Shown in pieces: positions 1 through 52,215 of a DNA stretch of 64,000 nt (positions are counted from its first letter, which is position 1; each line of letters starts with the position of its first letter). This DNA is from Phallusia mammillata (Eukaryota). The notes beneath the pieces are model-generated. The model was not told the DNA's origin. It did no database searches and worked only from the letters and a program-made list of their open reading frames with translations. The position numbers and the translations under genes are program-made. The stretch is from positions 2,604,001 through 2,668,000 of the forward strand of contig OZ281501.1 in the NCBI GenBank assembly GCA_965637545.1. Reading direction: 5' to 3'.

Positions 1-557
1 AATGTATTAGCTGAATTGTAGGAAACTAAGATACGTTTGCAATTAAGGGCTTCGTTTGTATGTACAAGAACTGCACTTAGTTGAGCATTTATGTTGACAT
101 TTACAAAGACATTGTAAATGTCATATAACTCGGTATTGATAACTAGTGTTTCGATTAGTGCTCGTATTGGCAAAGAGCACCTTTTGTACTCCACTAAGCG
201 TAACTTTCGACTCAATTGAGCGACACTAAAGTCAAAACATAAACTCAAATTGTAGCGATACCCAAGTTATTAGAACTAAAGTTTTGTCATGTTGGGTATG
301 GACTCAACTACACGTAAGAACAGCACTTTAATTCAGCAGTTAAGTTAACTTTCCTCAAGTTTTAACTCACTTGAGGGCTAACACTTATCCTTAAGTGTAT
401 AAGTCTACGTCGTACTAAAGTAGTGGCATTTCACTGGATCAGATAAATTTGTGGTAAATCGGTTTCGATAAGTTGCAAAGGGAGTTTGAGCTGCAATTCT
501 CTAACTAGTAACTTCGACTTGTTTGTGTAGTTCTTTGTACAGACATAACATGTCGGC

Positions 558-3500
558 ATGGGTTTAAACAAGTGTGAACCAATCTTTTGTGTGATTCTGA
601 CTTTATGGATTACAACTGGGTCTACCCTGGTTGTAAATTCAGAGGGTAAGTGGTTAAATTTACTTGATGTAATCCTCTTATTTTTATTAAATTTTAACAT
701 AGATAATAAGGCCTCGTCCAAAATGGAATTTTTATACCGATTGCATTGCTTTCAGTTGTTAAGTTTTCAAAGTTCATTGACGCATACTGTTTATTGTCCT
801 TTATGTCTAGGTAATGGTGAATACATACGTCAAAAGAATACATGAAATAACAAAACATACTTTACCAACAGTCCACTATTATACTATACACTGTACGATA
901 CGCAAAGTATAGTCGGCTGAATGCCTTTTGTCTGTGGCTTTTGCTTGGTACTATTTAGACACAATTAGGCTATGCTTATGACTACACGTGTCAACGTTAG
1001 ATAACATTGTCCTATACATACTTTTCATTATTTTTTAGCCCCCCATTGCTGTAGATATGCTTCACACAACGAAAGATGTCAAGACACTTGTATACAGGTG
1101 AGATAGGCAGCTAGCACCAAAAATCTGTCCCTGCGGTGAAGCCCATATGCTATCGTGTTAAGATTTTGATGCGATAAATGCGGTTGCAAACGGGAAACAG
1201 CGTGAGTCATGTTTTCAGTAAGGACGATGGAATTTAGAAGCAGTTTATAAACTTGTTGAGTTTTTTAAACTATCAATGGCTGTTTTACACACGTAAGGGA
1301 AATGTTTATTCATTTTGATTGATTGAGTTTACTTTAATCGTAAATTAAGACTACAATTTTAGTTGGTATCAGGAGCACTGTCGTGGACTGTCTTCAAAAA
1401 CCTTTAAAAAGTCATTTGAAATTTAACCGGATGGGCCTTGTGAATTCTGCACGTTAATAATGAACAGATGTGCGTTTGATGTCTTCAATTTTAAACTGAT
1501 GTAGGACCAAAAAGCATGTCCGGTTTCGAACCACATTTCCTTCCTAAAACAAGTGTCCACAAAGTCACGACGGTTTGTTAAACCTCAATTGGTAACAACA
1601 TGCGTTTCTCGTGCACTACGAATCGTACCACAGATGCCAAAAACAGTCCAAGCACTTAAAACACTGCCCGTCTGCACGACTGTCTGCGACCCTCAACAAC
1701 ATAAGATAGCAAACCATCGACCCAATATTAGCCACAACGTGAAACAGGCGTATGCACTTGTGTAGCATGGCGCTCTTAGACAAGCTACAGGGGCAACTGA
1801 AGCCGAATTCCTTTGCTACTATCTTGTCATTGCCATGCTGCATGCATGTCAGTGGTGATAATGTTGACATTTGGAAATGGGTTTGCCTGACCGCAAGGAC
1901 AGTGATGTAATGTATATTGAGTTTATGTAATAAATAAATCACTGATGATGGCAAGAGCATTTGCCGAAACGTTTGAACAATAAAGCATGTCGCTTTTTAC
2001 GTCTATTTGGGCCGTTATTTTCACCATTAAACTTATGAACAGATCCGTATATAGTGTTCCAAATTACGCAAGTTTGTAGATTAAAGTTATACCTGGACAA
2101 AAACAATCTTGAAATCATTTTTTTTACTTTGATCAAAACCTTTAAAGATGGCACGGTCTTTAAAATACGGTAATTGTAGATTATAGTCCCACAAACACAC
2201 AGATTTCAAACAAAAATGAACGATATTATTACACTTATTTTGACAACTTTGTATGCGCAGATATTCAAGACACAAGACCCAGTATTTCGTCAAGAACTAG
2301 AAATTCGTTTTCCCGTTTCATGTCCAAGGAGCGAAAGACAATTGGTAAGAAAATAATTTACATTTACATTTTTCGTTACTTAAGTCTATACCAAATTGAA
2401 ACCTTGGCCTAATCTTTATTAGTTAACAAGACAAAAAGTGCACTGGAGACAAAAAATGTATATTTTATGCTATAAATATTGTCATATAGCTCAGAATGGC
2501 CGAATTTAAATCGTGTGTCAAGGCGCCTATCTTCAATATATAACACTGCCCGTGGATTTAAATCTATTTATCAAAGCATCTCCGGTTTCAAGATTATACA
2601 ATAGCTTTCTGAATCATACTTTGAGGCTAATTTTAGAGACCCCGCACCCGAGTAAAAGCCATGTTTTTAGCAAATAGACATGTTACACACTGTTTATGAC
2701 GTAATTTTGTTCTCATTTATGACGTTGCAATACTAATTCATTGTAATGCAATTATAATTACAACACAAAGTAATGGTTTTCGCTAAAGCGGCCATGTTTT
2801 AACGTGCATAAGTGTAGGAGGGTGATATAGTACTGCGAAAAACTGCTGAATATTAGGTTTATTTAGAGCAGGCTCGAATAAAAGATAATTATATCCAAAA
2901 GGTTTTTCACATTTGTCATAAAATGTGGTCTAACACTATAAAAAATAAAATAATTAATGGTAAATGTACCATGCCTTTAATATTCAGAGAGAAATAAAAC
3001 TTTATGGAAAACGTGCGTTACACTTTGAACTCTAACATGCAAGTTAGTAAGGTTTAAAAACTGCGTGGTAAGAATGACACAAAACTTTGTAAGGGCAAGT
3101 CCTAGCTATGGACAGTCTTATGAATGGACGTATTGTCCAATCAGCTGCCTAACGACTACAACATATTCTCACATTAACCGCCTACGCTGATGAAACTCGG
3201 AATGACGTGGTATTTGCGCAGTCGCTATTCCTGTCCTCGAGTGCTCAGTTTATTGCACTTAGGCGTCACGCATGAATGAACATGTCGTGAAGACCAGTTT
3301 GTCATCGTTAAGCGATGGAAAACGTTTACATATGTTTTGGTTTGGGAGAAATGTTGACACCCCAAATTTTCATTTTCCATGATGATTTTTACCAAATTTC
3401 TCCTAATAAAGACGTCGATTCTTTACAGATAGATAATACATTTACACGTAGTATTCTATACCCATATACCCTGTCCCCAATTTTCGTAAAAAACGCGATA

Positions 3501-6500
3501 CATTTATAACTATTCGTTTTTAAGTATATATATATACAATCCATAAAGGGCAGATGCCTTTATTTTATGCATTTTTCAGCGATTTTTGGTGCATATACAT
3601 ACACAATGGCCATTTTTCTGACATTTATTTGTAACGTTGGTGGTCTTGGGGATAAAAAAGTATGTTAGATACAGTACGTGGTACAATGCCACCTTTATCT
3701 AAATTTATGACCTTCATATTTTCAAAAAATCAGAACGCGAAGCCCATATTTGAATTACACACAAAAAGTGTTTGTGTTATCAACAGCAAACAAGCCCCAC
3801 AAATCCAGGGAATAAAAGGCCCCACTAATAGCCCCAAAGGTCCCAATCAATCGACAATTTGCACAAAGACCCCCCTGTCACGAGGGTATATATTATTGGC
3901 TGTAACTGTTGCCCAGTAAAGGAGCAATACGTGATGACACAATAAAGAAGCGACAGAAAACGTTCTTTGATCGGCGCCGAGCTGTCACGCCTGATTTGCA
4001 GTGAAAGCACGTGGTTGCTTACGTCATAGCGTCCGGAATGGGACCTACTCCTGCTAAGTTGGGGCCGACATTTTTTGTCTACCCCTAAAAGTGTCCATTA
4101 ATGCGCTAAAACCCTTTTATTAGACGCACTTTATTGGTTTTGCTAATCACTTTGGCAAGGAAGGTCTATTGACTGAAAATTTTCTCCTATCCCATAAAAT
4201 ATATTGGTTATCTTTTAGGCCGATTTAGTGTAGGGTAATTTGTTTTAGAGTTAACTTTGTATTCAAAATTTCATTATGCTAACTTTTTGGGCAAGAGGTT
4301 TTTGTTGTGGCAAAACATAAAATCCTACAGTTTAAAGAACGCAGTATACTTCTTTGGGTGCTTAATTCCGTGGTTAAAACACAATCATTTAATTGTGGGT
4401 TCTCATATGTTTAGCATACTTTCCAGTTGCTTATTAAAATAGAATATACTTCGAATGTATGAAGTTATCTGATACTGAATAACATTTTCAAAAAACTACG
4501 TAAACATGTGCAAATTCAGTGAATAAAATGGAATCTAATTTTTGTTGAAAGCAATTGCATGGCTGTGTGATGTCTTTGACCAGCAAGGACAGTCACAACA
4601 GAACAAACAAACATAAGAAAATACAACCAACATGGCTTATAAAGTTTGTCCAGTTTAGGCGAAACGCTTTCAAGTTTTAACTTAATTTTACCTGCTGAAA
4701 CATTTATAATGTATTAAAATTTGGCTGTATTTTTGTAAAACTAACTCCGTATTTCCAACCTATAAATTCGTCACACAATCCCAGTTCTCCAACGGCCACG
4801 TGGGGTCCGAACTTGTTGTCTCTGTGACAGGATAGGGCCATTGATGACGGACAATGGAAACGTTCCACAGTTTGCAACAAGCCTTCTAGAATAGCGAGTT
4901 TGTTTAAGTCCATTGTGACGTCACAGTGATGTTCCGTTCGACGCCAAGAGTTATTTGAGTTGGAAAGTAAGCTTGTTAGGCAGTGTACGAAGCACTGTAG
5001 ACCCATTGAATGGCCGGATTAGGGTTTTTAACTGTTTTGTTATCTTGTTGCGGTAACTTGAGGTCCAATATGTTGCGCTTACGTTCGAGTCGACACTAAA
5101 CGAAGACATATTCGCCAAATTCAGCTTTTAAAAATTGATTGACTGGATTTTTTTCACATTTGCGAATTTTTAAATGACGAGAGTTGCACATTTTTCCGTT
5201 ATGGTTGTGACGTCACAAAGAGTGTAGTGATGTCATATGAAGTCCACAAAGGAACATCTTTCATTTACAAAAGTGTCAATGCAGCAAAAAGTATTGTGTC
5301 CTACGTAAAGCGACAATGATGTCACCTGATAAAACTGTAGAATCATTTGATTATTGTCCATTAGTCGCCATTTAAATTTATTTATCTACGTCATCAGAAC
5401 ACGAATATACGCGTCATGTTTATATTTGTCGAGTCATGTCGCCAAACTGTGTAAAAATTATACGTTGTAGGCCTGTAGGGGTTAGACAACACATTTAGTT
5501 AGATTGTTTTCTCCCAAACTGTGGATTAAAAGTATTTTGGGCAAATGATGGCTTTCATATCGGCGACTTAACTTCGTTGGAATGTTGGCTGGCGAATTTT
5601 AATCGCATTTTACCACATTTCTGTTTATTTTATTGAGACTAACTGCAACAATCTTTAAATATGCTATGTAAACCCCCGTAAAAAACAGATTCGGTTAATC
5701 CGCACCTTCGACTAATTCGGACAAAACTTGAGGTGCAAATTATTTGTAATGTGGTAAGGCTTGAACTAATCGACATCGGTTAGTTTGGATCATCGCTTAA
5801 TCCGAACAATTTGTTGGTCCAAACTGGTCCGGATTAACCGAGGTTTATTGTATAACGGTTATATTGGTGTAAAATATTCCAAGTAAACCACATTTACTAT
5901 CTACTTAATAAGGCAATAAATGCGATATGAAGCACCGCTAATTTCTTATTTTTACCGGACACCGCATACATAAAGGTATGCTCGTAATTCAACGCTCACA
6001 AAAATCACTGATTGTAACATTCCTAGCAGTTCAGTATATAAATGTCCATATTTACATACTTGCGTATTTCAATGACAAGAATTTTCTTTTTGTAGAAAAA
6101 CCTCTGGACGTGTTTAGACCAAACGAATGGTGAGTGTTTGTGTTTTCATATTGTTGGTAAAATTGCTCCAAGAAAGTTAACATCGAGTATAGAAATTGAA
6201 ATTGAAAGATTTTAGTTTCAAACCTTTTTTTGCCTATACTTAATTGCAGAAAGAAGAAAAAAAAAAAAAAAACATTTGGCATTTCTTTTCCCAAAACACA
6301 CATGACCTTTTCGCATAACTTGCATTTATTGAACAAACTTCATTTGATTGGCATATTTTTTCTTAATGTTTTGCAAACAAATGCTTAAATGTGGTTAAAG
6401 TGAGGTTGTGGTGCAAAGAAAGCCAATTTGTACGTGGGAATGCTACGTTATTGAGGTATGTTTTTGTAAACATTGTTTTAACAACACAAATATGTTTTTC

Positions 6501-9500
6501 TGTTGAATTTAAACGAATCTTGTGACGGTATTTATGACGCTTTAGATACGTTTTACAATTATGGCGCTTTTCAAAACTCGGTTATAAACTGAGGCGATTT
6601 TTGAATGACTTTAACGTTTGAAATGAGCTTTAATAGAAGCTATTCTCTTGGACACGAGTTCTTTAAGTTAAATTTGCAATTTCTTTTCACACTATTTATT
6701 GTGCATATTTTTGGTAGTATTTTGCCGTAGTTGAAAGCACACAACTAGCTCAATAAACCCGATTTTAGCATTCAAAATTAATAATCTAAAATGCTCCTGG
6801 TCGCAATATTTGCATTCTATCCTAAACTATATGTTTTTATATTTATTACAGACTTTGAAATGCTATATACGGATCTGTTCATAACATTAAAGCCGAAAAT
6901 AACGGCCAAAATAGACGTAAAAAGCGACATGCTATATGCAAACGTTTCGGCAAATGCTCATGCCATCATCAGTGATATGAGATGGTCACGCCATTGATAC
7001 AGACTACTACGGCAAAAACGTTTTTCATTTAACAGTTCTGGTAAATCAGTAACTAGCAAGTTATTACCGGTCTTTATATAATGCGACTTTAATTAGTGGT
7101 TGTAATGGCCTCAATCGGTCGTATCAAAGAAACATTTTGTTTCTGAGATAAAAACACGCTTTTGTGTCATGTTATTAATCTCCAAAATCAGTAACGTTAC
7201 GATTGGGACGATTTGATTGGTTTATATTTTGCCGTTTGACCCGTCGTCTAATTTACTTTTATTTGTAGAAACAAATTGGTTTATGCGTGTTGGGAGGTTG
7301 TAAAAAAACACATAATGTTTTGGATTTTCGTACAACTAACATGGCATAAATATTTTTATAGAGTATTTCTTATTTTAAATTTATACATAAACTTCGTTAG
7401 TCGTGAGTTCAAACAACTAATTTAAAAATCAACAAAATATTACTTAAAACCGTGTATCGGTGATTCTGAGTTTTACAAAGTTGCTTAGTTATTAACATTG
7501 AATACTAACATTGGAAACGTGAGCTGCGTATGTTCTCCGTCACAGTCAGGAAGTCCAAGTCGTTATTTCTTACCTCACCGGACCCTCAGTATTGACTTGT
7601 ACAAGACATCTGTCAAAATATACTTAACCACTTGACTTACTAAGTCATTAGCCCAGTTGGACAGGTCGCTAACGGTGGTTAACCAGACCAGGCAAAAAGT
7701 CTTGATGTGTTTTTTATTCTGAATTATACGAACCAATACAAAATATTCCATTCAGTTTAATACGACAATCTTTTCATAATTTTTTTGCTTAATATTAATA
7801 CTCTTATAAATTAAAACACAAGTTATTGCATTATGAGGGTTTAACATAATGATCAGATAGTTTGTTTAAAAAACTGTCATACAAATTTGCTCCCCTCGCT
7901 ATAAAATTGACGGTCTTTTTCATCGGAATTTCGCCAGAAACTTGTTACCCCCGAAAAATGAAGTTAAGCCCTAATGACATACTGTTGCCCCTTTGGTATC
8001 TGCAAAACTCGCAATTTGGAACAATACCCCCTAACCTATAAGCCATGGAGACAATTATGGGGTTTTACTTGATTATAGTCCTCACGTATTATGAACACCC
8101 ACAATTTATGGCCAGTGCTATTGTATTAGCCTTGGGTATCTCCTAAATTATTTAACCGAATAGCACCTGATGTCATAGCGCAAAATCAGTGAGGCGTATC
8201 GCCGCCAAAACAATAACCTCAATTTTTAGGTACGTGTTGATAATGCGCATTTAACTGGCTTCAACGATTCTACGCCTGTTTGGCAATATGACGTGCGAAT
8301 GATAAAGTCGCGTCAATTACTTGAAAACTGCTCTTAATACTGGCATTAATTTGCCGTCCGCGGGCAAGTAGAGATGAATGCAGGATCTCAGAGCCATGTC
8401 TGCCCGTAATTTGTTTGTTGTTTCGACACACCCCGTACGGCCCCTTCGCCCTAATGTAACTATACGCATCCATTGGGGCCTGAAGTTTGGGGTTTCCTTG
8501 GCCCCAGTTCGTCGCTCCTGGGGCATGAAGAGACCCCAGCGGTCCAAAACATCGCGATTGACGATTTGTAACTGTGTGCTGTCGTCACGCCGATAATTCT
8601 TCATCTTATGTCACGCGCACGCTTATGGTTGTTTTTCTTAGTTTTGCAAATTTGCAAGAGAAATGTATACCCTAGTGCGCAGGCTAAAGCTTTTTCTTAA
8701 CTTTATATATGTGATAAATGTGCACGTTTTTGCTTTGTGTTTGATGGTGTTGTTTGTTTAAACAGGTTTTTACACTTTTCACTCACATAATTTTAAATAT
8801 ATTCCCATGTTATGTGCATTATGTTTGGGCAATTACTGCTCGACCAAATACCCAAGCGTATACATATTTATAACTTAAAGCCGGCAACTGAAGAATAACA
8901 GCAACGTAGGTTTTATGAAAGGCATACACCATTGTTGCCAAACTTAATTACAAGAATTCACATGTCATTCTGACTGAAAAATAGACTCTGTCTACATATA
9001 AGGCTCCATTTTAGACTCAATTTCTCCGTTTTTGTCTGCATAAGGTTACATACACATTTTATTGGGAAATTTGATAATATGGGCCTAGCCGTTTAAAAAA
9101 TTACGCTTGTAGTACAACTAAATGACATAAAAGTTAAGTTGCACCAATTGTTTTTGATTTTGCGACCATTTTCTCAACCACGCGCACAAAATCAACAAGC
9201 CCAGCCCCATCCGGTCAAAACTGCATAAGCCTTTGAACTTCGTACTTGAAGCGTGCTAAATCCGCTGATACCAGACCCGAGCTATTGAACGCAGCTTCCT
9301 TTGTGCAAGTCCTTCGAATTGAAGATCAAGGCTATTGGTTAAATCAACGGGATAAAACAGAACACGCGTGGTGGGAATTGTAACTGAATATGGCTTGATG
9401 CAAATAACTGAATTTGAATGTCTATGGCGATTTTTGGTTGATTTTCTGACTGATAAGGTGCTTTAAAGTTCGTTTGTTCGTTAGTTCGCTTGACCTTTAA

Positions 9501-43732: not shown

Positions 43733-46339
43733 TCACTGGTTTGGATTCAGAGAAAGTAAAACGTTTTGACTGTTAGGCAGATAACTGACATTTCGTGATT
43801 TTGACATCAGACCAGCAATTTCTTCAGCAGCTTCCAATTTTCGCAGCTGGATTAAACCCTCTCCAGCTTCAGCTGTGAGCAAAATACACATAATTTGTGT
43901 TAATTTATTTTTCAGAATTTTGTTCAAAAAAACTAAACATTGGCTAATGGATCTTATGCAGTGGTAGGATTCAAATTTTTATTGCCAGCTGGTTTTATTA
44001 CAAAAGTCACATTTTTCAGTCAGTTCTGTTACAAAAAGTCCATTGACAGTAACCAGTAATGCTAACCAGTTCGCTGATCTTATAAAATTCGTGAGGTGGT
44101 TATAGAACTGGTGCAAACCGGCTGAATCTCACAACTGATCTTATGCTCACAAATTTTTCAGACAACCTACCAACAGATTTTGCAATCATTTCAGCAGCTT
44201 TAGCATCTCCCTCAGCGGTTGTAATTGCAGCAATTTTTTGTTGCTCAGCCTGCAATAACATTGCAAAATTTTAAGCAAACTTGTTTTCGGCTTTTTATCA
44301 CTTATTACTGAGTGCTTGGACTCTATAGTTCATGCATTAGCCACTATTTTTTATTAAGCTAGGTTATGTTTTTTTGAATCAACTTTACAGAAAGATGATG
44401 CAATAATTTGGCAGAATAGCCAATAAATTTTGACAAACCGCTGCGCTATGTAAGATATTTCATTGTTTCTGTACAGCTAGCAATTTTCTACTTTTGAGGC
44501 AATGATGACTGGACATAATTAAAGACAATACCTATGTTATTTACTACTAGCCCCTTGGTGGAAACACCATATTGAGGAAAATAACTTTATAATGACTGTT
44601 CTAAAGTAAAAAGGGCAAGGCCACAACACAGAGCATTGTCTAAACTGCTTCATATTGCACAAAAGTTTGCCAACCCTGCTATAGTGTACACAAAATGGGT
44701 AAATACCTTTTCCACAACAAAACGTGCTCTTTCAGCCTCCTGCTGTGCAACTTGTTTCTGTTCAACTGCAGTGGTGAATTCATGTCCGAAAGTCAAATGT
44801 GTCAAAGAAACATCATCCAAAATTAATCCGAATGAATCAGCCCGCTCTGCAAGGTCTTCACTTACCTTGAATGATGAAAAATAAGTAAACAACGAAAGGA
44901 CATGCAAATGCTATGTGGTAAACATACCTGTCTGGATACTGTTTCTCTTTGTGTAATAAGTTCACTGGCATCAAACCGGGCCTATAAAGGATAAAAAAAA
45001 ATTACAGCACAAACAAAACAGAATATTTTTTTCAGTAAAACGAACAAAAAAAGTATGTATCTTTAAGGCTAAAGTAGAACAGGTCATACCACAACTGCTT
45101 TCAAAACTTCATTTGTGATGGAAGGCAAGATTCGTTCATCATAATCTTCTCCGATTGTGGAGAAAATTCCAGGAAGTTTTGATGGTTTTGGTCGGAAGAG
45201 AATTCGCAAAGTAATGTGCACATTCTGCAAATCTGGAATAAAAAAGTGTAAAATGTGAGCTTTTTGATGGATTAAAGAACTTGGTTACAAAAAACTTTAT
45301 TTGCTTTAAAGCTGCTCTCTGCATTACAAAATCCAAAACATTATTTAACACGTACATTTATATTGGCAAAAATTCTTATTTATTGTGATATATGGATATT
45401 ATTTAAAATAGACATTAACGGCGCCCAATTGCTAAGTTATCAGTAGAAAAAGCTTTAAACACAAAGGATTAGGGTTGTGACCACAATATAACTTTGTACT
45501 AATTTATAGCGCTGTTGCTCTAAATCAGTTAAATTTAAAAGGTTCAATAATTTTTTGAGTCTTTTGTCTTTACACTGAAAATATAAAATACCTACAATCA
45601 ATTTCTCCAGCGGTTTCCCAAAATTTGGACTTGCAACTACAACTACAGCTTTTGGTATTTAAATGAAACACTTGCGGTCTCTTAAAACTACTTAGCGGTC
45701 ACCCAAACCAAACCTTAAAAAAAACCTGCCTACAATCAGATAAGCAATATGACAGTATTTTTAATGATTTTCACATTTTAGATAGCATTAAATACTTCGA
45801 ATTTTGCTTTTGATTAACAGAAGGAAACTACAAGACAGCCTTTACCTTTCGAACCAGTTACAACAGGGATATTTCTTGGTTGAGCTTTGCAATCAAATAT
45901 GATTGGTTTTTGAATGAGTGGAATAAGAAAATGTGTTCCTTCATCACTGACTGTTTGTTTGACTCCAGAGAAGCGATCAAAAATTACACCTCGACACCCA
46001 GCATCAACTGTAAAATGACAAAACATAAAAATCATTAATATTTAAAAATTGGCACACAATTTTTGTTTAAACCTTAAACACAAATTATTTTTTAAATATG
46101 AGTACATATTTGATTTTGACATAAAATTGAGTCGGATTTTTTATAAGATTCAAACACATTGTCTCCACTGTTAGGAATAATCTAGGTTTTAGTCTCAACA
46201 AGATTGGAAGAAAAATTGAAACGACCTTTTATATAGTTTACACTTTACACTTACCGTTATAAAGTGCAGAATTGACAATTCCTCCAGCAACTGCTAATCC
46301 CAAACCAAGCTTGGTTAATCTTGACATAAGAGCCTCCAT
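43733..46339 (-). CDS. PHB1: Prohibitin 1, 273 aa, 7 exons
   Basis: Exons (minus): 46255-46339, 45846-46007, 45090-45232, 44928-44981, 44707-44865, 44171-44249, 43733-43872 (822 nt). [49 protein letters not shown] and [11 protein letters not shown] match prohibitin. Confidence 0.96.
43959..44137. mobile_element. hAT-type MITE, 179 bp, family A (PHB1 intron 6)
   Basis: TIRs CAGTGGTAGGATTC / GAATCTCACAACTG; perfect 8-bp TSD ATCTTATG (43951-43958, 44138-44145). Confidence 0.85.
45601..45728 (-). mobile_element. 128-bp insertion flanked by a 10-bp direct repeat
   Basis: CCTACAATCA at 45591-45600 and 45729-45738; the body is homologous to 35638-35756; no TIRs visible. Confidence 0.7.
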
Positions 46340-46982: not shown

Positions 46983-47471
46983 ATGAGCCAGTCTAATCGC
47001 ATGTCAACTGCATATCGTAGAATAACGAAGGAGTTGCAACTTATGCGAGAAAGCCCAGACACAGAAATCTACGCAAATCCAACACAAAATGATGACTTAC
47101 TCAACTGGACAGCAACCATAAAAGGCCCGGCTGATACCCCATACGAAGGTGGTCTATTTCACGTTTCAATTGCTTTAGCAGTTACTTATCCGTTTACGCC
47201 TCCAAAAGTGCGTTTCACGACGCCTATTTTTCATCCGAATATCAGCTCAGATGGAAGAATTTGCTTGGACATTTTGACCACGACCTGGTCGCCGGCTTTG
47301 ACAATCTCAAAAGTTTTAATGTCAGTACTCTCATTGATGTCCGACCCTAACGTGAATGACCCGTTAGTGTTTAGAGTGGCCGAAATGTACCGGTCAGACC
47401 ACGAAAAATTTCAAGCTCAAGCAAAAAATTGGACGAAAAAGTACGCTATATCAAAGTCTGTCCAAAAGTGA
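46983..47471 (+). CDS. Intronless ubiquitin-conjugating enzyme E2, divergent UBE2D/Ubc4-like paralog, 162 aa
   Basis: Single ORF with GP.DTPYEGG.F, YPFTPPKVRFTTPIFHPNI (HPN motif), catalytic Cys in GRICLDIL, and WSPALTISKVL. The exact ortholog cannot be assigned. Confidence 0.92.
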   Translation: MSQSNRMSTAYRRITKELQLMRESPDTEIYANPTQNDDLLNWTATIKGPADTPYEGGLFHVSIALAVTYPFTPPKVRFTTPIFHPNISSDGRICLDILTTTWSPALTISKVLMSVLSLMSDPNVNDPLVFRVAEMYRSDHEKFQAQAKNWTKKYAISKSVQK

Positions 47472-48039
47472 CAGAATCTTTTGCATAAGATGGAAATAGT
47501 ATGTTGAAGGACGGATAAGGACGTTTGTGCAAATGATTGTACGCGTTACGACTCAAAATTTTTCTGTACCTGCTTTGTACCAATTTTATTTGGTGTGTTT
47601 TTCTGTTTTAGCGTATTATTGTCATCTGTGAACCTATGCATCTTAAAAAGTGCTGTAAACATGTTTTTTAATACAGTGCGCTCCCATCAAAACGAAGTCT
47701 TTTAAAAGTTTTCTGCTTTTTACGTTTATGTAAAAAATGCGTTTTTTCAATATCAACGGTGTACTGTGAGGTGCTTCTGTGTGACGAAATGTACTTTCAT
47801 TGATGACAAAAAGCTTGTCAAATTAATTCAAATGACGACATTTGCGTCATGATACGCACTTTGTGGTAACCAACGTCAAACATTTTGTCATTTTTTTTAC
47901 GATTTTCTTACCTGACGGGTGAACCCTTCTGAAATGCTCATTATTGCTTTAGTTTAAGACTAACATTTTTTATCTGCATCGGATTTTATGTTAAACATAG
48001 TTAATAGAATTCAAACATTTCATTAAACTCCTTTTTTTT

Positions 48040-48134
48040 CACGGGGTTCGAACCCAGGACTCTCCCGGGGACGAATCCCGATCAGGGTTTTTTATGTCTG
48101 TATATGGGTCAGGCGCGCCGGACCATTCGGCCAA
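48040..48134 (-). repeat. tRNA-derived repeat or pseudogene, copy 2 (Leu/Ser class-II-like)
   Basis: A-box TGGCCGAATGG, B-box GGTTCGAACCC, anticodon-like stem CCTGA/TCGGG with a ~20-nt insert. The acceptor stem cannot pair, so it is not a functional tRNA. Confidence 0.7.
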
Positions 48135-48584
48135 GTTCCTGCCCCCTTTTATTTGAGCAAATTTGCTCTAATCCTCTACCACCTCTGACGTCTAAATTAA
48201 TCTCAGCGTTCCCAACTTACAGCAAACGTCCCCAAAGTGACGCTATCGCCTAGTTTTATGAACCACGGCTGTGGGCAAAGGAGCAATGACATAATTGAAC
48301 GAGCTGTACATGACACAATTTTTACGAAGGCATTTTTACAGTGTAAAAGATACTGTAGTCAATATTGTGTTGGTGTATAAAAAATGTAGCTAATCTTAAA
48401 GCAATCTTGACCTCAAAACACTTTTTTCTGTACACAGTAGTGAAAGTTTATGCACCAAATCAATGCCTGTAAGTACTTCAGAATCTGGCTAAAAATACCC
48501 CCTAATATGTAAACACATCATTGCCATGGTTTATGTAATAGAACTGGCACACTTTGAACAATTAAATTACACAGAAATTTTGAA

Positions 48585-49625
48585 TTACTGAGTATCCATT
48601 TCTTTGTCTTGGGCATTATCCAATTCACGAAGGAATGATCGGCATTTGGTCATTAGAATCTTTATAGACTCAGAAACCAGAACATTGGGTGCTAAACCAA
48701 CAGCGGACTCCACAGAATATATGAAATGGTCCTTGACCTTGCTCAACTTAACTTTGTCTTTTAAATTTGGATGTCTGAACACTTCTCTACTACATGTGTC
48801 CATCCGAGCTGAAACCACATATGCTTCTTCTTCACATTGATCATTTTGCTTGATTCCAATCACACCTGGAGAAAAACAGCTTTGCAACTCCTTGACATCG
48901 TCACCAGTAATTTTGCTGAGTAGTTTAATTTCTGGCAGCAATCTGTATGATGCAGTGGCGACAGGTGAAAACTTGGCATGGTCACGGCCCAATCCTTTGA
49001 CTGCTTGCATTTTGACATCAATCTCATGGCCTGGACGAAGTTTGGCAATAAGTATGTCATCATGGACTGGTTTTACACAAGACACATCACTTTGGTTGCC
49101 TTTAGGTATCCACACAATGTCACCAGAAAACACTTTGTGATGTTTGTACATCACATTAGGATCAGTTGCATCTTTCGGTGCAGATGGATTTTTGGTGCAC
49201 TTTATGTTAAGTTCAAGATCTAGTGTGTCCTCTGCTGTTCCTTCAAGGTCATCTGTTTGCCGAAACTCAAACAAGCGAGCATCAACGTCAAGAGGAATTA
49301 ATCCCAATCTGTGCGCCAATACTTCATCTTGAATTACACTGGTGTTATTGTACAAAAACACTTTTTCAATAGCCATTGTTGGAACTTCTGCAATTAAAAT
49401 TCTTCTGAAGGCATTAGCAATAGATGCATCGATTCCAATCATGTCAAACTGCATTTCCTTGTCATCTATTGAAATTATTTTCACTCGAAAATTAGAAATA
49501 AATTTTCTGGAATCCCAAGCATCATTGTAACCACTGTAACTTCCAGGAAAATCTGTTGTATGAACATTGCTGAGACCCTGTTCATTTAAAGTAAGCCGCG
49601 TTCGCATCTCTTCAATGTGATACAT
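48585..49625 (-). CDS. POLR1C: RNA polymerases I and III shared subunit RPAC1/RPC40, intronless, 346 aa
   Basis: [11 protein letters not shown] aligns with the human N-terminus [51 protein letters not shown] and [17 protein letters not shown] are present. The ATG at 49625-49623 gives an ortholog-like length. Confidence 0.96.
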
Positions 49626-49626
49626 T

Positions 49627-49827
49627 TTACTTGTTTCCAGCGTCAATTTGATCAGAACCTTGCGATATAGCTGGTTTCTTTTTGGTATCTGGTTGTGTAA
49701 AGGCTTGTTTTGTTGCATAAGCCAAAAGAGCTGCACTAAAAACAGTTAGTCCCATCAACGAGTACGACACACTCTTATGAACTCTATTCAAAAACAGCTC
49801 TTTACGTGCATCGGTCCACCAGGCCAT
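49627..49827 (-). CDS. COX14: COX14-like small single-TM mitochondrial complex IV assembly factor, 66 aa
   Basis: [19 protein letters not shown] aligns with human COX14 YKTFSTSMMLLTVYGGYL. One TM segment and a similar size. A strong 3' splice acceptor (TTTTGACTTTTGCACAG, AG at 49867-49866) lies upstream of the ATG. Confidence 0.65.
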
Positions 49828-50374
49828 TACCCATATAGGCTGGTTTCAAAACTGTTAAATGTAATCTGTGCAAAAGTCAAAACAAACATGTCACACAACG
49901 AAACGACAGGGGTAACAAAAACTACGGGCACACTTAAATGACATAAAAATTAATAATTTTCAAATATAAAAGACAATAAAAAGAAATCACGTTAAATAAA
50001 ATTAAAGTATTTACTTTCGCAAACGCAAAGAACAAGGTCATGCTTCCAAATGTGCCGTTCCGCATGAAAAATTTCAGTGTACTTTAACAAGTCACGCAGA
50101 ATGACGCAATGTTAAAAAAATATTTTTAAAACCAAGTATCTGGTCTATTTGTTCAAAATAAAACATTCTCAATACTTGACAACTCAAAATATATTAAAAA
50201 CTGTGTTGAACAACACTTAAAAAAGAGCGTATTGATAGTACACTTCGGAAATAAAATTTGATTTTTATGAACAAAACAGGGATTTGTTTTGTTTACCACT
50301 GGAAATGCAAAAACGTGAAAGACTACGTTGGCTTAAAATTTATTTGCACTAAAGTTGTCATTAAAATACGCAAA
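49828..50374. promoter_or_regulatory. Putative bidirectional promoter, COX14-like/POLR1C versus UBE2G2
   Basis: Head-to-head ATGs about 550 bp apart. Confidence 0.5.
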
Positions 50375-52215
50375 ATGGTTGGTTCTGCGTTGAAGAGATT
50401 AATGGCGGAATACAAACGTAAGTTTTTGCTTTGTGTTTTTTTAAATTAATTCAAGTATAAATCACATTACATTTTACAATACAATGTGTTACTTTTGACA
50501 ACCATAGTTATAAGTTATTGAAGGTATATTTTCTGTTGTAATATTTAAGAACAAAGTAAAGATTGTTAATATTGAATACGGGTGGTGAATATTGTTTAGT
50601 ACTGTAGTGTCTGTTTAGAAAAACAAGTTGTGTATATATTATACACGTTATTAAATGTAGTTATATTTCCAGAACTGTCTTTGAATCCCCCAGAAGGAAT
50701 TGTCGCTGGGCCTGTAAATGAGGAAAATTTCTTTGAATGGGAAGCACTCATTCTGTGGGTATTTGTTAATCAAACATTGTTGATATGTAGCAGTGGTAAT
50801 ATTGGTTTTTATCATGTGAATGTATTATGTATAGTGGGCCAGCAGAAACCCCTTTTGATGGTGGAGTTTTCAAAACATCATTGCTTTTCCCTACTGACTA
50901 CCCAATGAGTCCACCAAAGATGAGGTTTATCTCAGATATGTTTCATCCAAATAGTGAGTATTTAATGCTGTGTCTAAAAATATTGTATTGAATGGTGTAT
51001 AATCAGTTGAGGCTTCATACAGAAATGGTGGGATATGACTTTTCAGTCTGTTACTCCCAACAAACTGGCGTGCCGTTAGATAGCTGCACTAGCCAATACA
51101 GCCCGTGTTCTATCACCAGCTGCACTGATGAGACTTTTTTTACTGCTATGGACAGATTTCGATCAAGTTGTTTATTTTCAGTTTACCCTGATGGTCGTGT
51201 TTGCATTTCAATTCTACATTCACCTGGGGATGATCCAATGGGTTACGAAACGAGTGCTGAAAGGTGGTCACCTGTACAGAGCATTGAGAAGATCCTTTTA
51301 TCAGTCATGAGCATGTTAGCAGGTAAGCATACCGTTTGGTTATTGCAAAAAATGCTTTGGGGTAGATTCCAGGAATATACAAAAACTTACCAAAATACAC
51401 AGTAGGAATAGTTGCTTGTCTTTTGTAGGGCTGTTACACTTTCTTTTACATTTATTTTTATTTGTATGTTTTTATTTTGGTGTATGATATTTCTACTCAC
51501 ATTGCGCGAAAATCACTGTCTTGTAAGCTCCCATCACTTAACCCAGGGGCGGGCAACCTTTGTTACTGTGGGGTCAATTGCAAATGTAAAAATTGGATTG
51601 CGGGCCGCACATGTGCATCACACAAAGTGATTTTGCTTTGTTTCTTACCAAATATGCTTAACTACAAGTATAATTCGTATTTGATTCTAGCCACATTTTT
51701 GCCAGATCGCAGAAAACTAGCATGAGGCGCATTGATCAGCTCAAAAATATGTAATAATTGGACTCGTTTGCCAGTACTTCTGAAATCCAAGCATCTCTGC
51801 GGGCCGCAGGTTGCCCACCCCTGACTTAACCCTTTATAATGCAGTGTAGCTAAATGCGCTGATTTAATAATAATCCATCAAATGTGTCCTTCACTGTTTT
51901 GCGCTCAATAATGTTTTAATGTTGTGCAGTTATATCCGGCTTGGTGATTGCTTTAGTGTAATTATGCCACTTTGTGTTCTTTCACCAAGCAACATAAACT
52001 CAATGTATTTGCTTGAAGAAATTACGTGTAATTTCTTTGCATTCTGACATTTTACTTTTGTATGTTTAATTGTTTATTTATCATGTTTAGAACCAAACCC
52101 TGAGTCCGGAGCGAATGTTGATGCTTCAAAAATGTGGAGAGATGACAGAGAACAATTTGACAAACAAGCTGAACGCTTGGTTCGGAAATCCCTCGATTTA
52201 CCACCTGATTTATGA
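50375..52215 (+). CDS. UBE2G2: Ubiquitin-conjugating enzyme E2 G2 (Ubc7, ERAD), 169 aa, 5 exons
   Basis: Exons 50375-50417, 50673-50754, 50835-50953, 51182-51322, 52091-52215 (510 nt). [66 protein letters not shown] and [18 protein letters not shown]. Confidence 0.96.
51544..51823. mobile_element. hAT/Charlie-like MITE, 280 bp (UBE2G2 intron 4)
   Basis: TIRs CAGGGGCGGGCAACC / GGTTGCCCACCCCTG; perfect 8-bp TSD ACTTAACC. Confidence 0.9.

What the first reader, a model, noticed from the sequence alone, without database searches (positions are those of the whole stretch)
48585..49827. Candidate bicistronic COX14-like/POLR1C locus: stop and start codons 1 nt apart (TAA-A-ATG)
Seen: on the minus strand a 66-aa COX14-like ORF ends at TAA 49629-49627, and the ortholog-length POLR1C ATG starts at 49625. 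That leaves no room for a 3'UTR, poly(A) site, promoter or intercistronic spacer. Both ORFs are intronless and sit below one strong acceptor (49867). Established: ascidian operons are normally resolved by SL trans-splicing; stop-start reinitiation is known from viral RNAs and a few bicistronic animal mRNAs. Inference: one mRNA may produce both a mitochondrial complex IV assembly factor and the shared Pol I/III subunit, probably by reinitiation, because several AUGs lie upstream of the POLR1C start. This would couple respiratory assembly to rRNA/tRNA synthesis.
Basis: partly seen in the sequence, partly recalled or inferred. Interest (0 to 1): 0.8.

Follow-up and report, generated by a model that had tools for sequence, protein, structure and literature searches.

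The report
Conserved COX14–POLR1C two-gene mRNA
In the sea squirt Phallusia mammillata, a small mitochondrial assembly factor (COX14) and an essential RNA polymerase I/III subunit (POLR1C) lie one base apart on a single spliced-leader mRNA, and this pairing is kept in at least nine tunicate lineages; how the second protein gets translated is still untested.

Summary
On the minus strand a 66-aa ORF (49827-49627) ends in TAA, one A follows, and a 346-aa POLR1C ORF starts at 49625. The small ORF scores above Pfam's COX14 threshold. The large ORF is 100% identical to the UniRef RPAC1 of Phallusia mammillata.

RNA contigs from four studies run without introns across both ORFs. One contig carries the 16-nt ascidian spliced leader joined just after AG 49867-49866.

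COX14 sits 1-33 nt upstream of an intronless POLR1C in at least nine tunicate lineages, seen in genome DNA and in transcript contigs. One transcript contig is SL-capped. Ciona intestinalis and one member of the Styela-like clade lack the pairing. COX14 is under strong purifying selection (dN/dS 0.04-0.11).

COX14 has no room for a 3' UTR of its own, so it must be made from the bicistronic RNA. Every assembled POLR1C transcript also contains COX14. How POLR1C is translated is not shown: reinitiation, leaky scanning and a minor internally trans-spliced mRNA all remain open. I found no conserved RNA structure or TURBS motif.

This scan earlier noted a second TAA-A-ATG gene pair elsewhere in this genome. 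My verdict is a real, conserved bicistronic locus: a new member of a known kind, of moderate interest.

The parts
49866..49867 (-). AG of the SL trans-splice acceptor (a T-rich tract lies upstream); the exon starts at 49865
   Evidence: in contig X1 the loose end is TSO tail GTACGGG plus ATTCTATTTGAATAAG joined to ATTACA. The SL sequence is as given for Ciona in PMC7986045.
49828..49865 (-). 38-nt 5' leader after the SL. It holds an out-of-frame uAUG (49834-49832, weak context) that opens a 10-codon uORF overlapping the COX14 AUG.
49627..49827 (-). Cistron 1: COX14 homologue, 66 aa plus TAA, with one hydrophobic helix (about residues 20-38)
   Evidence: Pfam PF14880 at 28.8 bits, above cut-off. 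All 6 aligned orthologues hit COX14. dN/dS is 0.04-0.11 in a related clade.
49626..49626 (-). One-nucleotide spacer (A) between the COX14 TAA and the POLR1C ATG
   Evidence: Spacers in relatives are 9, 9, 12, 13, 13, 25, 28, 31 and 33 nt.
48585..49625 (-). Cistron 2: POLR1C/RPAC1, 346 aa plus stop, intronless
   Evidence: Pfam RNA_pol_L and RNA_pol_A_bac; 100% identity to UniRef RPAC1 of Phallusia mammillata; contigs are colinear with the genome.
49716..49718 (-). ATG in the POLR1C frame, inside the COX14 ORF, in weak context (C at -3). It would give the 377-aa form used by the public model.
48499..48584 (-). 3' UTR as far as the contig ends in runs X1 and X5. One run extends to 48263. There is no canonical AATAAA.
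   Evidence: table 8

Best explanation
The stretch from 49865 to about 48499 (minus strand) is one intronless exon. It is SL trans-spliced at AG 49867-49866 and matures into a genuinely bicistronic mRNA: SL, a 38-nt leader, COX14 (66 aa), one nucleotide, POLR1C (346 aa), then the 3' UTR.

Shown here:
- Both ORFs belong to their families.
- One SL-capped RNA spans both ORFs.
- The arrangement is old and conserved in the tunicate clade that holds Phallusia, Clavelina and a group of planktonic tunicates.
- COX14 is under purifying selection.

Inferred:
- COX14 can only be made from this bicistronic RNA. No stop-containing mRNA could end between the two ORFs.
- POLR1C is most likely translated from the same RNA by ribosomes that did not finish their work at COX14.

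For POLR1C translation in Phallusia my split is as follows:
- About 45% termination-reinitiation at UAA-A-AUG after the 66-codon ORF.
- About 35% bypass of the COX14 AUG, either by leaky scanning or through the overlapping 10-codon uORF. All three internal AUGs have a pyrimidine at -3, whereas the POLR1C AUG has A at -3.
- About 20% a separate minor mRNA.

In relatives with a weak COX14 AUG context and no internal AUGs, leaky scanning is the more likely route.
For: -
- The runs are RNA, because the neighbouring plus-strand UBE2G-like gene shows GT..AG joints.
- Single contigs cover 48499-49858 in X1 and X5 and 48595-49858 in X9. They cross the junction without a break, and the X1 contig carries the SL at the upstream acceptor.
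- In X17 the contig that holds COX14 has depth 82.6 against 61.2 for the POLR1C body, so there is no excess of POLR1C-only RNA (a crude measure).
- L008 is a 1,839-nt metatranscriptome contig. It begins with an adaptor tail and the full SL, then carries COX14, a 9-nt spacer and POLR1C.
- L009-L015 are further RNA contigs and all are bicistronic.
- Genome DNA shows the same order in Clavelina (L004), L001-3, L016 (Tara metagenome), L017 and L018.
- The spacers of Phallusia, L001, L009 and L010 contain no AG, so no acceptor can lie between the stop and the start.
- A collection scan for the SL within 30 nt of the POLR1C ATG of the planktonic clade found nothing. Both contigs retrieved by the POLR1C start pattern were bicistronic.
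- dN/dS is 0.04-0.11 at dS 0.7-2.1.
- Every POLR1C AUG has a purine at -3, and every internal AUG has a pyrimidine at -3.
Against: - All RNA evidence comes from assembled contigs, which drop rare variants. A short SL tip at an internal acceptor would be pruned, so a minor monocistronic SL-POLR1C mRNA is not excluded.
- No poly(A) tail was seen.
- Translation of either ORF was not observed.
- The COX14 AUG in Phallusia is in strong context (G at -3, G at +4). Three AUGs intervene, exactly the number expected by chance (observed 3, expected 2.97). Leaky scanning alone therefore looks inefficient for an essential protein.
- Efficient reinitiation after a 66-codon ORF usually needs a special element. 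No conserved UGGGA motif and no significant structure (z from -0.24 to +0.87) was found.
- Ciona has a stand-alone POLR1C with its own acceptor.
Confidence: 0.68

Rival explanations
1. This is a Ciona-type SL-resolved operon used in an either/or way. Some pre-mRNAs stay bicistronic and serve only as COX14 mRNA. Others are trans-spliced at an AG inside or at the 3' end of the COX14 ORF (for example AG 49631-49630, directly before TAAAATG, or CAG near -47) and give a monocistronic SL-POLR1C mRNA that supplies the polymerase subunit.
For: - About 20% of Ciona genes lie in operons whose genes abut without intercistronic DNA, and single-exon 5' genes are typical of these operons (PMC1488885 and PMC2760879).
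- An AG lies immediately before the stop in Phallusia, L009, L010 and L016, and a YAG lies 33-51 nt upstream of every POLR1C ATG.
- The longer spacers of Clavelina, L017 and L018 contain AGs, two of them behind pyrimidine-rich runs.
- Contigs cannot show minor isoforms (tool note).
Against: - No contig in 4 Phallusia RNA runs, or in about 8 RNA contigs from relatives, starts with the SL near POLR1C, and none breaks at a candidate acceptor.
- The X17 depth of the COX14-containing contig is not lower than that of the POLR1C body.
- The sequence upstream of the Phallusia candidate AGs is purine-rich, unlike the verified acceptor at 49867.
- Under the Ciona rule, where poly(A) is added at the G of the acceptor AG, the upstream product would lack a stop codon.
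Confidence: 0.2
2. An internal promoter or TSS inside or upstream of the COX14 ORF gives a conventional, non-trans-spliced, monocistronic POLR1C mRNA.
For: Nothing direct. Contigs cannot exclude it. The public 377-aa model shows only that the transcript model extends at least 93 nt upstream of 49625.
Against: Contigs are continuous, with no depth step in favour of POLR1C. The 200-nt coding sequence is under protein-level constraint. Spacers of 1-33 nt leave no room for a core promoter outside the ORF.
Confidence: 0.05
3. The small ORF is only a regulatory uORF of POLR1C and does not give a functional COX14 protein.
For: It sits where a uORF would sit, and a short uORF lies upstream of it as well.
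Against: Its Pfam COX14 score is above the curated cut-off, and all aligned orthologues hit COX14. dN/dS of 0.04-0.11 with near-saturated dS shows that selection acts on the amino-acid sequence.
Confidence: 0.04

Closest known systems
Ciona-type SL-resolved operons (Satou et al. 2006, PMC1488885; 2008, PMC2760879)
   Same: The genes lie on the same strand and abut, the first gene is single-exon, the same 16-nt SL is used, and there is one upstream acceptor and promoter region.
   Different: In Ciona operons the upstream mRNA keeps its own 3' UTR and is polyadenylated at the G of the AG that serves as SL acceptor for the downstream gene. Here the two coding sequences themselves are 1 nt apart. 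No AG lies between stop and start, and no SL-bearing downstream mRNA was seen, so the RNA appears to stay bicistronic.
Human RPP14/HsHTD2 bicistronic mRNA (reviewed in PMC4705651)
   Same: One animal mRNA encodes a subunit of a nuclear RNA-synthesis or RNA-processing enzyme together with an unrelated mitochondrial protein. The translation mechanism is unproven ('likely leaky scanning and/or reinitiation').
   Different: The order is reversed, with the nuclear protein first and the mitochondrial protein in the 3' UTR. The proteins are different, and there is no spliced leader.
Green-algal exclusively bicistronic loci translated by leaky scanning (PMC11291117)
   Same: ORF 1 is short and ORF 2 long, with short inter-ORF spacers that sometimes overlap. 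Small mitochondrial proteins, including cytochrome c oxidase assembly factors (5 of the 22 mitochondria-associated loci in Auxenochlorella, e.g. a PET100 orthologue), recur at such loci. The planktonic tunicate relatives show the same signature: a weak ORF 1 Kozak context and no AUG before ORF 2.
   Different: Phallusia itself has a strong ORF 1 context and three internal AUGs. The lineage is different, and the RNA is SL trans-spliced.
Termination-reinitiation after long ORFs (calicivirus and influenza B TURBS; cellular cases in PMC3923131; review PMC10275272)
   Same: Stop and restart codons lie within about 20-30 nt of each other. UAA-A-AUG in Phallusia resembles UAAUG or AUGA junctions.
   Different: No conserved UGGGA 18S-complementary motif and no significant local structure was found. 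The spacer length drifts from 1 to 33 nt among relatives.

Membership tests
COX14 (Pfam PF14880) | Profile score above the curated gathering threshold | tested here: met
   28.8 bits against a cut-off of 25, E 1.1e-6. All 6 of 6 orthologues match, best E 2.6e-9.
COX14 (Pfam PF14880) | Small (about 60-70 aa) protein with a single membrane helix | tested here: met
   The proteins are 61-67 aa and share one conserved hydrophobic stretch in alignments A1. This was read from the sequence; no TM predictor was run.
COX14 (Pfam PF14880) | Mitochondrial inner-membrane location and a role in COX1 translation and assembly | not testable with these tools
   Needs localisation and loss-of-function experiments.
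POLR1C / RPAC1 | Rpb3/RpoA-like dimerisation domain with an inserted domain, and orthology to RPAC1 | tested here: met
   PF01193 plus PF01000. It is 100% identical to UniRef RPAC1 of P. mammillata and 57-73% identical to other RPAC1 proteins among the 120 best listed. It groups with tunicate RPAC1 in the tree.
Ciona-type SL-resolved operon | Same-strand genes less than 100 nt apart under one upstream promoter or acceptor | tested here: met
   1-nt spacing, and the SL acceptor lies only at 49867-49866.
Ciona-type SL-resolved operon | The downstream cistron receives the SL at the boundary | tested here: inconclusive
   No SL-POLR1C contig was found in any run or collection, but contigs drop rare forms and raw reads were not available.
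Ciona-type SL-resolved operon | A complete upstream mRNA ends (poly(A) on the G of the acceptor AG) at the boundary | tested here: not met
   No AG lies between stop and ATG in Phallusia, L001, L009 or L010. The nearest AG precedes the stop codon, so such an mRNA would lack a stop.
True bicistronic mRNA | Both complete ORFs on one mature RNA | tested here: met
   SL-carrying contigs span both ORFs in Phallusia and in L008. A poly(A) tail was not observed.
True bicistronic mRNA | Both ORFs translated from that RNA | not testable with these tools
   Needs ribosome profiling, proteomics or reporters.
TURBS-type termination-reinitiation | Stop and restart codons within about 20-30 nt | tested here: met
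   Spacers are 1-33 nt; the criterion comes from PMC10275272.
TURBS-type termination-reinitiation | A conserved 18S-complementary motif in a structured element upstream of the stop | tested here: not met
   UGGGA occurs only once, 129 nt upstream, and in Phallusia alone. Fold z-scores run from -0.24 to +0.87.
Leaky-scanning bicistron (green-algal type) | Weak ORF 1 start context and depletion of AUGs before ORF 2 | tested here: inconclusive
   Not met in Phallusia: GTAatgG context and 3 internal AUGs against 2.97 expected. It is a trend in relatives: TTTatgG context and 0 AUGs in the planktonic clade, 0 in Clavelina, with P(0) of 0.13-0.68 each. The lineages are not independent.

The most novel reading that the evidence does not exclude
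An essential RNA polymerase I/III subunit has been expressed for a long time as the second cistron of an obligately bicistronic, SL-capped mRNA behind a mitochondrial complex IV assembly factor. This holds across a major tunicate clade. The locus would be one example of a wider, uncharacterised class of unresolved 'zero-spacer operons' in ascidians. These would depend on reinitiation or leaky scanning rather than on SL trans-splicing; a second TAA-A-ATG pair was noted elsewhere in this genome.
Probability: 0.5. Interest if true: 0.7.

Novelty: new member of a known kind. Interest (0 to 1): 0.55.

Why it matters
Tunicate operons are usually described as resolved into monocistronic mRNAs by the spliced leader. 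This locus leaves no room for that resolution. It is also conserved, so it offers a clean natural test of how a chordate ribosome reaches a long, essential second ORF.

Natural variation among relatives supplies ready-made comparisons: spacers of 1-33 nt, strong or weak first-AUG contexts, and 0-3 internal AUGs. Phallusia and Ciona embryos can be electroporated with reporters.

The locus also adds an animal example to a recurring pattern, known from green algae and from human uORF or alternative-ORF proteins, in which tiny mitochondrial assembly factors ride on other genes' mRNAs.

On the practical side, gene annotation misses COX14 here. The public RPAC1 model of this species appears to be over-extended by 31 residues.

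Tried and rejected
- Word-based homologue search with the 66-aa protein alone found nothing. The alignment-based search found only close tunicate relatives.
- Exact look-up of both proteins found neither in the collection.
- PDB sequence search gave no meaningful hit.
- Rfam scan of 47500-50500 gave no family.
- Folding 150-nt windows around the junction in 5 species gave no structure beyond shuffled controls.
- A TURBS motif-1 search found nothing conserved.
The single-gap version covered only 0-30 nt upstream of the ATG and found nothing, so an acceptor at about -47 was not covered by that scan. It is covered only indirectly by the contigs retrieved and by protein look-ups.
- Assembly chimera was rejected. 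The same order is present in genome DNA of several species and in independent RNA assemblies.
- Chance ORF was rejected, on the Pfam hits plus the dN/dS values.
- A scan of the whole 64-kb window for other ORF pairs with gaps of 40 nt or less found no second genuine case.
- Contig L007 starts with a library adaptor 39 nt before its ATG, so it says nothing about its upstream region.

Full report
**Observation.** On the minus strand, an ATG at 49827 opens a 66-aa ORF that ends with TAA at 49629-49627. A single A follows at 49626, and an ATG at 49625 opens a 346-aa ORF that ends at 48585. The small protein hits Pfam COX14 (PF14880) at 28.8 bits, above the curated cut-off of 25. The large one carries the RNA_pol_L and RNA_pol_A_bac domains of RPAC1/POLR1C. 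The large protein is 100% identical to the UniRef entry 'RPAC1, Phallusia mammillata', which identifies the organism. That public model is 377 aa because it starts at an in-frame ATG (49718) inside the COX14 ORF.

**RNA evidence.** I laid contigs of four public runs from four studies on 47500-51500.
- The runs are RNA, because the divergent plus-strand UBE2G-like gene shows three GT..AG joints.
- Single contigs cover 48499-49858 (X1, X5) and 48595-49858 (X9). They are colinear with the genome and cross the TAA-A-ATG junction.
- In X17 the region is split at 49530 and 49781, most simply by polymorphism.
- The X1 contig continues beyond the genome match. In mRNA sense the extra sequence reads GTACGGG, then ATTCTATTTGAATAAG, then ATTACA. 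That is a template-switch oligo tail, the 16-nt ascidian spliced leader (sequence as given for Ciona in PMC7986045), and the first bases after AG 49867-49866.
- In X17 the contig containing COX14 has depth 82.6 against 61.2 for the POLR1C body. This is crude, but there is no sign of an excess of POLR1C-only RNA.

**Conservation.** Starting from POLR1C homologues, I fetched the encoding DNA of the closest ones. A COX14-family ORF of 61-67 aa lies directly upstream of an intronless POLR1C in the following:
- An unidentified ascidian that is sister to Phallusia in the tree (L001-3, metagenome DNA, 28-nt spacer).
- Clavelina lepadiformis (L004, genome, 31 nt).
- Two further ENA genome assemblies (L017, 33 nt; L018, 25 nt).
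- A clade of at least four diverged tunicates from marine plankton samples. L008-L015 are RNA contigs and L016 is a Tara metagenome scaffold. Their spacers are 9, 9, 13, 12, 13, 9, 12 and 9 nt.

L008 is a full-length-looking transcript. It begins with an adaptor tail plus the complete SL, followed by a 66-nt leader, COX14, 9 nt and POLR1C. L013 begins with the last three SL bases at the same junction.

All six aligned small proteins hit Pfam COX14. Within the planktonic clade, dN/dS of COX14 is 0.04-0.11 while dS is 0.7-2.1, so the protein sequence is under strong purifying selection. Spacers differ by indels that are not multiples of three, so the two frames are not linked.

In a POLR1C tree, all carriers fall in one well-supported tunicate clade together with Ciona. 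Ciona intestinalis itself (L005) and a member of the Styela-like clade (L006) have an intronless POLR1C behind its own good acceptor. Neither has a COX14-like ORF within 3 kb. The pairing is therefore old and widely kept, but it can be broken.

**What this is.** In Ciona operons the genes abut, yet each keeps its UTRs. Poly(A) of the upstream mRNA is added to the G of the very AG that serves as SL acceptor of the downstream gene, usually without AAUAAA (PMC1488885 sections 14 and 17). Single-exon first genes are typical (PMC2760879).

Here the coding sequences themselves nearly touch. In Phallusia, L001, L009 and L010 there is no AG between stop and start. The nearest AG in Phallusia (49631-49630) precedes the stop codon, so an upstream mRNA ending there would have no stop. 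COX14 can therefore only be made from the bicistronic RNA.

For POLR1C, every RNA contig I could find includes COX14: four Phallusia runs and about eight contigs from relatives. No contig starts with the SL near POLR1C. A collection scan for the SL within 30 nt of the POLR1C ATG of the planktonic clade found nothing. The two contigs recovered by the POLR1C start pattern were both bicistronic.

I conclude that the bicistronic RNA is the main, and possibly the only, mature mRNA for both proteins (confidence about 0.7). The limit is that contigs drop rare forms, so a minor internally trans-spliced or internally initiated POLR1C mRNA remains possible.

**How the second ORF may be translated (inferred).** In Phallusia the COX14 AUG is in strong context (G at -3, G at +4). 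Three AUGs lie between it and the POLR1C AUG, exactly the number expected from synonymous resampling (3 against 2.97). Together with UAA-A-AUG, this favours termination-reinitiation.

Two other observations point the other way or widen the options:
- All three internal AUGs have a pyrimidine at -3, one of them is in the POLR1C frame, and the POLR1C AUG has A at -3.
- A 10-codon uORF in the leader overlaps and bypasses the COX14 AUG. Bypass routes therefore exist too.

In relatives the picture is closer to classic leaky scanning:
- The planktonic clade has TTTatgG at COX14, no internal AUG in 213-217 nt, and ACCatgG or ACAatgG at POLR1C in three of the four sequences tabulated (GTGatgG in L008).
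- Clavelina has no internal AUG.
- L017 and L018 have one weak internal AUG each.
- The probability of zero AUGs given the protein sequence is only 0.13-0.68 per lineage, and the lineages are not independent. This is a trend, not proof.

No conserved UGGGA motif and no local structure beyond shuffled controls was found. A TURBS-like or IRES-like element is therefore unsupported. Spacers of 1-33 nt fall in the range where coupled reinitiation works in viral systems (PMC10275272).

**Comparison with known systems.**
- The closest tunicate system is the Ciona-type operon. This locus fails one defining feature, because a complete upstream mRNA cannot end at the boundary. The test of a second feature, an SL on the downstream cistron, was inconclusive.
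- As a true bicistronic animal mRNA it resembles human RPP14/HsHTD2, which pairs a nuclear RNase P subunit with a mitochondrial enzyme and whose mechanism is likewise unproven (PMC4705651).
- In layout it resembles green-algal bicistronic loci. These are translated by leaky scanning and are notably rich in cytochrome c oxidase assembly factors (PMC11291117).

I found no paper describing a COX14-POLR1C pair or unresolved bicistronic mRNAs in tunicates. These searches cover open-access text only.

**Earlier notes of this scan.** Two notes concern other DNA of the same genome, and I did not test either. One is a TMEM234/NR2C2AP pair with the identical TAA-A-ATG junction, which a follow-up agent read as an extreme sea-squirt operon. 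The other is a NEDD8/TRAPPC1 pair 23 nt apart. They suggest that this locus belongs to a class.

**Verdict.** The reinitiation mechanism and the idea of functional coupling remain untested. The locus is a new member of a known kind, bicistronic animal mRNAs. It is unusual for its age, for carrying an essential second cistron, and for occurring in a lineage that normally resolves operons by trans-splicing.

Noticed in passing
window 48032-48146 (minus strand): A roughly 115-nt element with a tRNA-like T-arm (GGTTCGAACCCC) and an A-run at its end. In the RNA contigs it has very high summed depth (up to about 1,800) and many different flanks, so it looks like a dispersed, transcribed tRNA-derived SINE. 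Rfam gave no hit.
   Followed up: partly
window 50315-51322 (plus strand): A divergent UBE2G-like ubiquitin-conjugating enzyme gene. Exons 50315-50417, 50673-50754, 50835-50953 and 51182-51322 are confirmed by GT..AG joints in RNA contigs. Its 5' end lies only about 450 nt from the COX14/POLR1C SL acceptor, so 49868-50314 probably holds a shared bidirectional promoter and the outron.
   Followed up: partly
window 46983-47471 (plus strand); L004 5882-7050: An intronless 162-aa UBC-fold E2 ORF lies convergent to POLR1C. Clavelina also has a UQ_con gene convergent downstream of POLR1C, which suggests conserved microsynteny.
   Followed up: no
window 44650-46035 (minus strand): ORF fragments with prohibitin-like sequence (recognised by eye, not tested) lie further downstream on the same strand as POLR1C.
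   Followed up: no
L001 2782-2792: In the Phallusia sister species the leader holds a minimal start-stop uORF, ATG-TAA, whose last A is the first base of the COX14 ATG (ATGTAATG). Short uORFs also precede COX14 in Phallusia, L008, L009, L010, L016 and L018.
   Followed up: partly
window 49716-49718; P0001: The public UniRef RPAC1 model of Phallusia mammillata (377 aa) starts at an in-frame ATG inside the COX14 ORF. It is probably 31 residues too long. COX14 itself was not found as an exact sequence in the protein collection.
   Followed up: partly
L005 (Ciona intestinalis) 1-7038: In Ciona, POLR1C sits between a GAF/PDEase gene and UFL1 on the same strand. UFL1 starts about 390 nt after the POLR1C stop. 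POLR1C has its own acceptor 35 nt before the ATG. This is a different neighbourhood from that in Phallusia.
   Followed up: no
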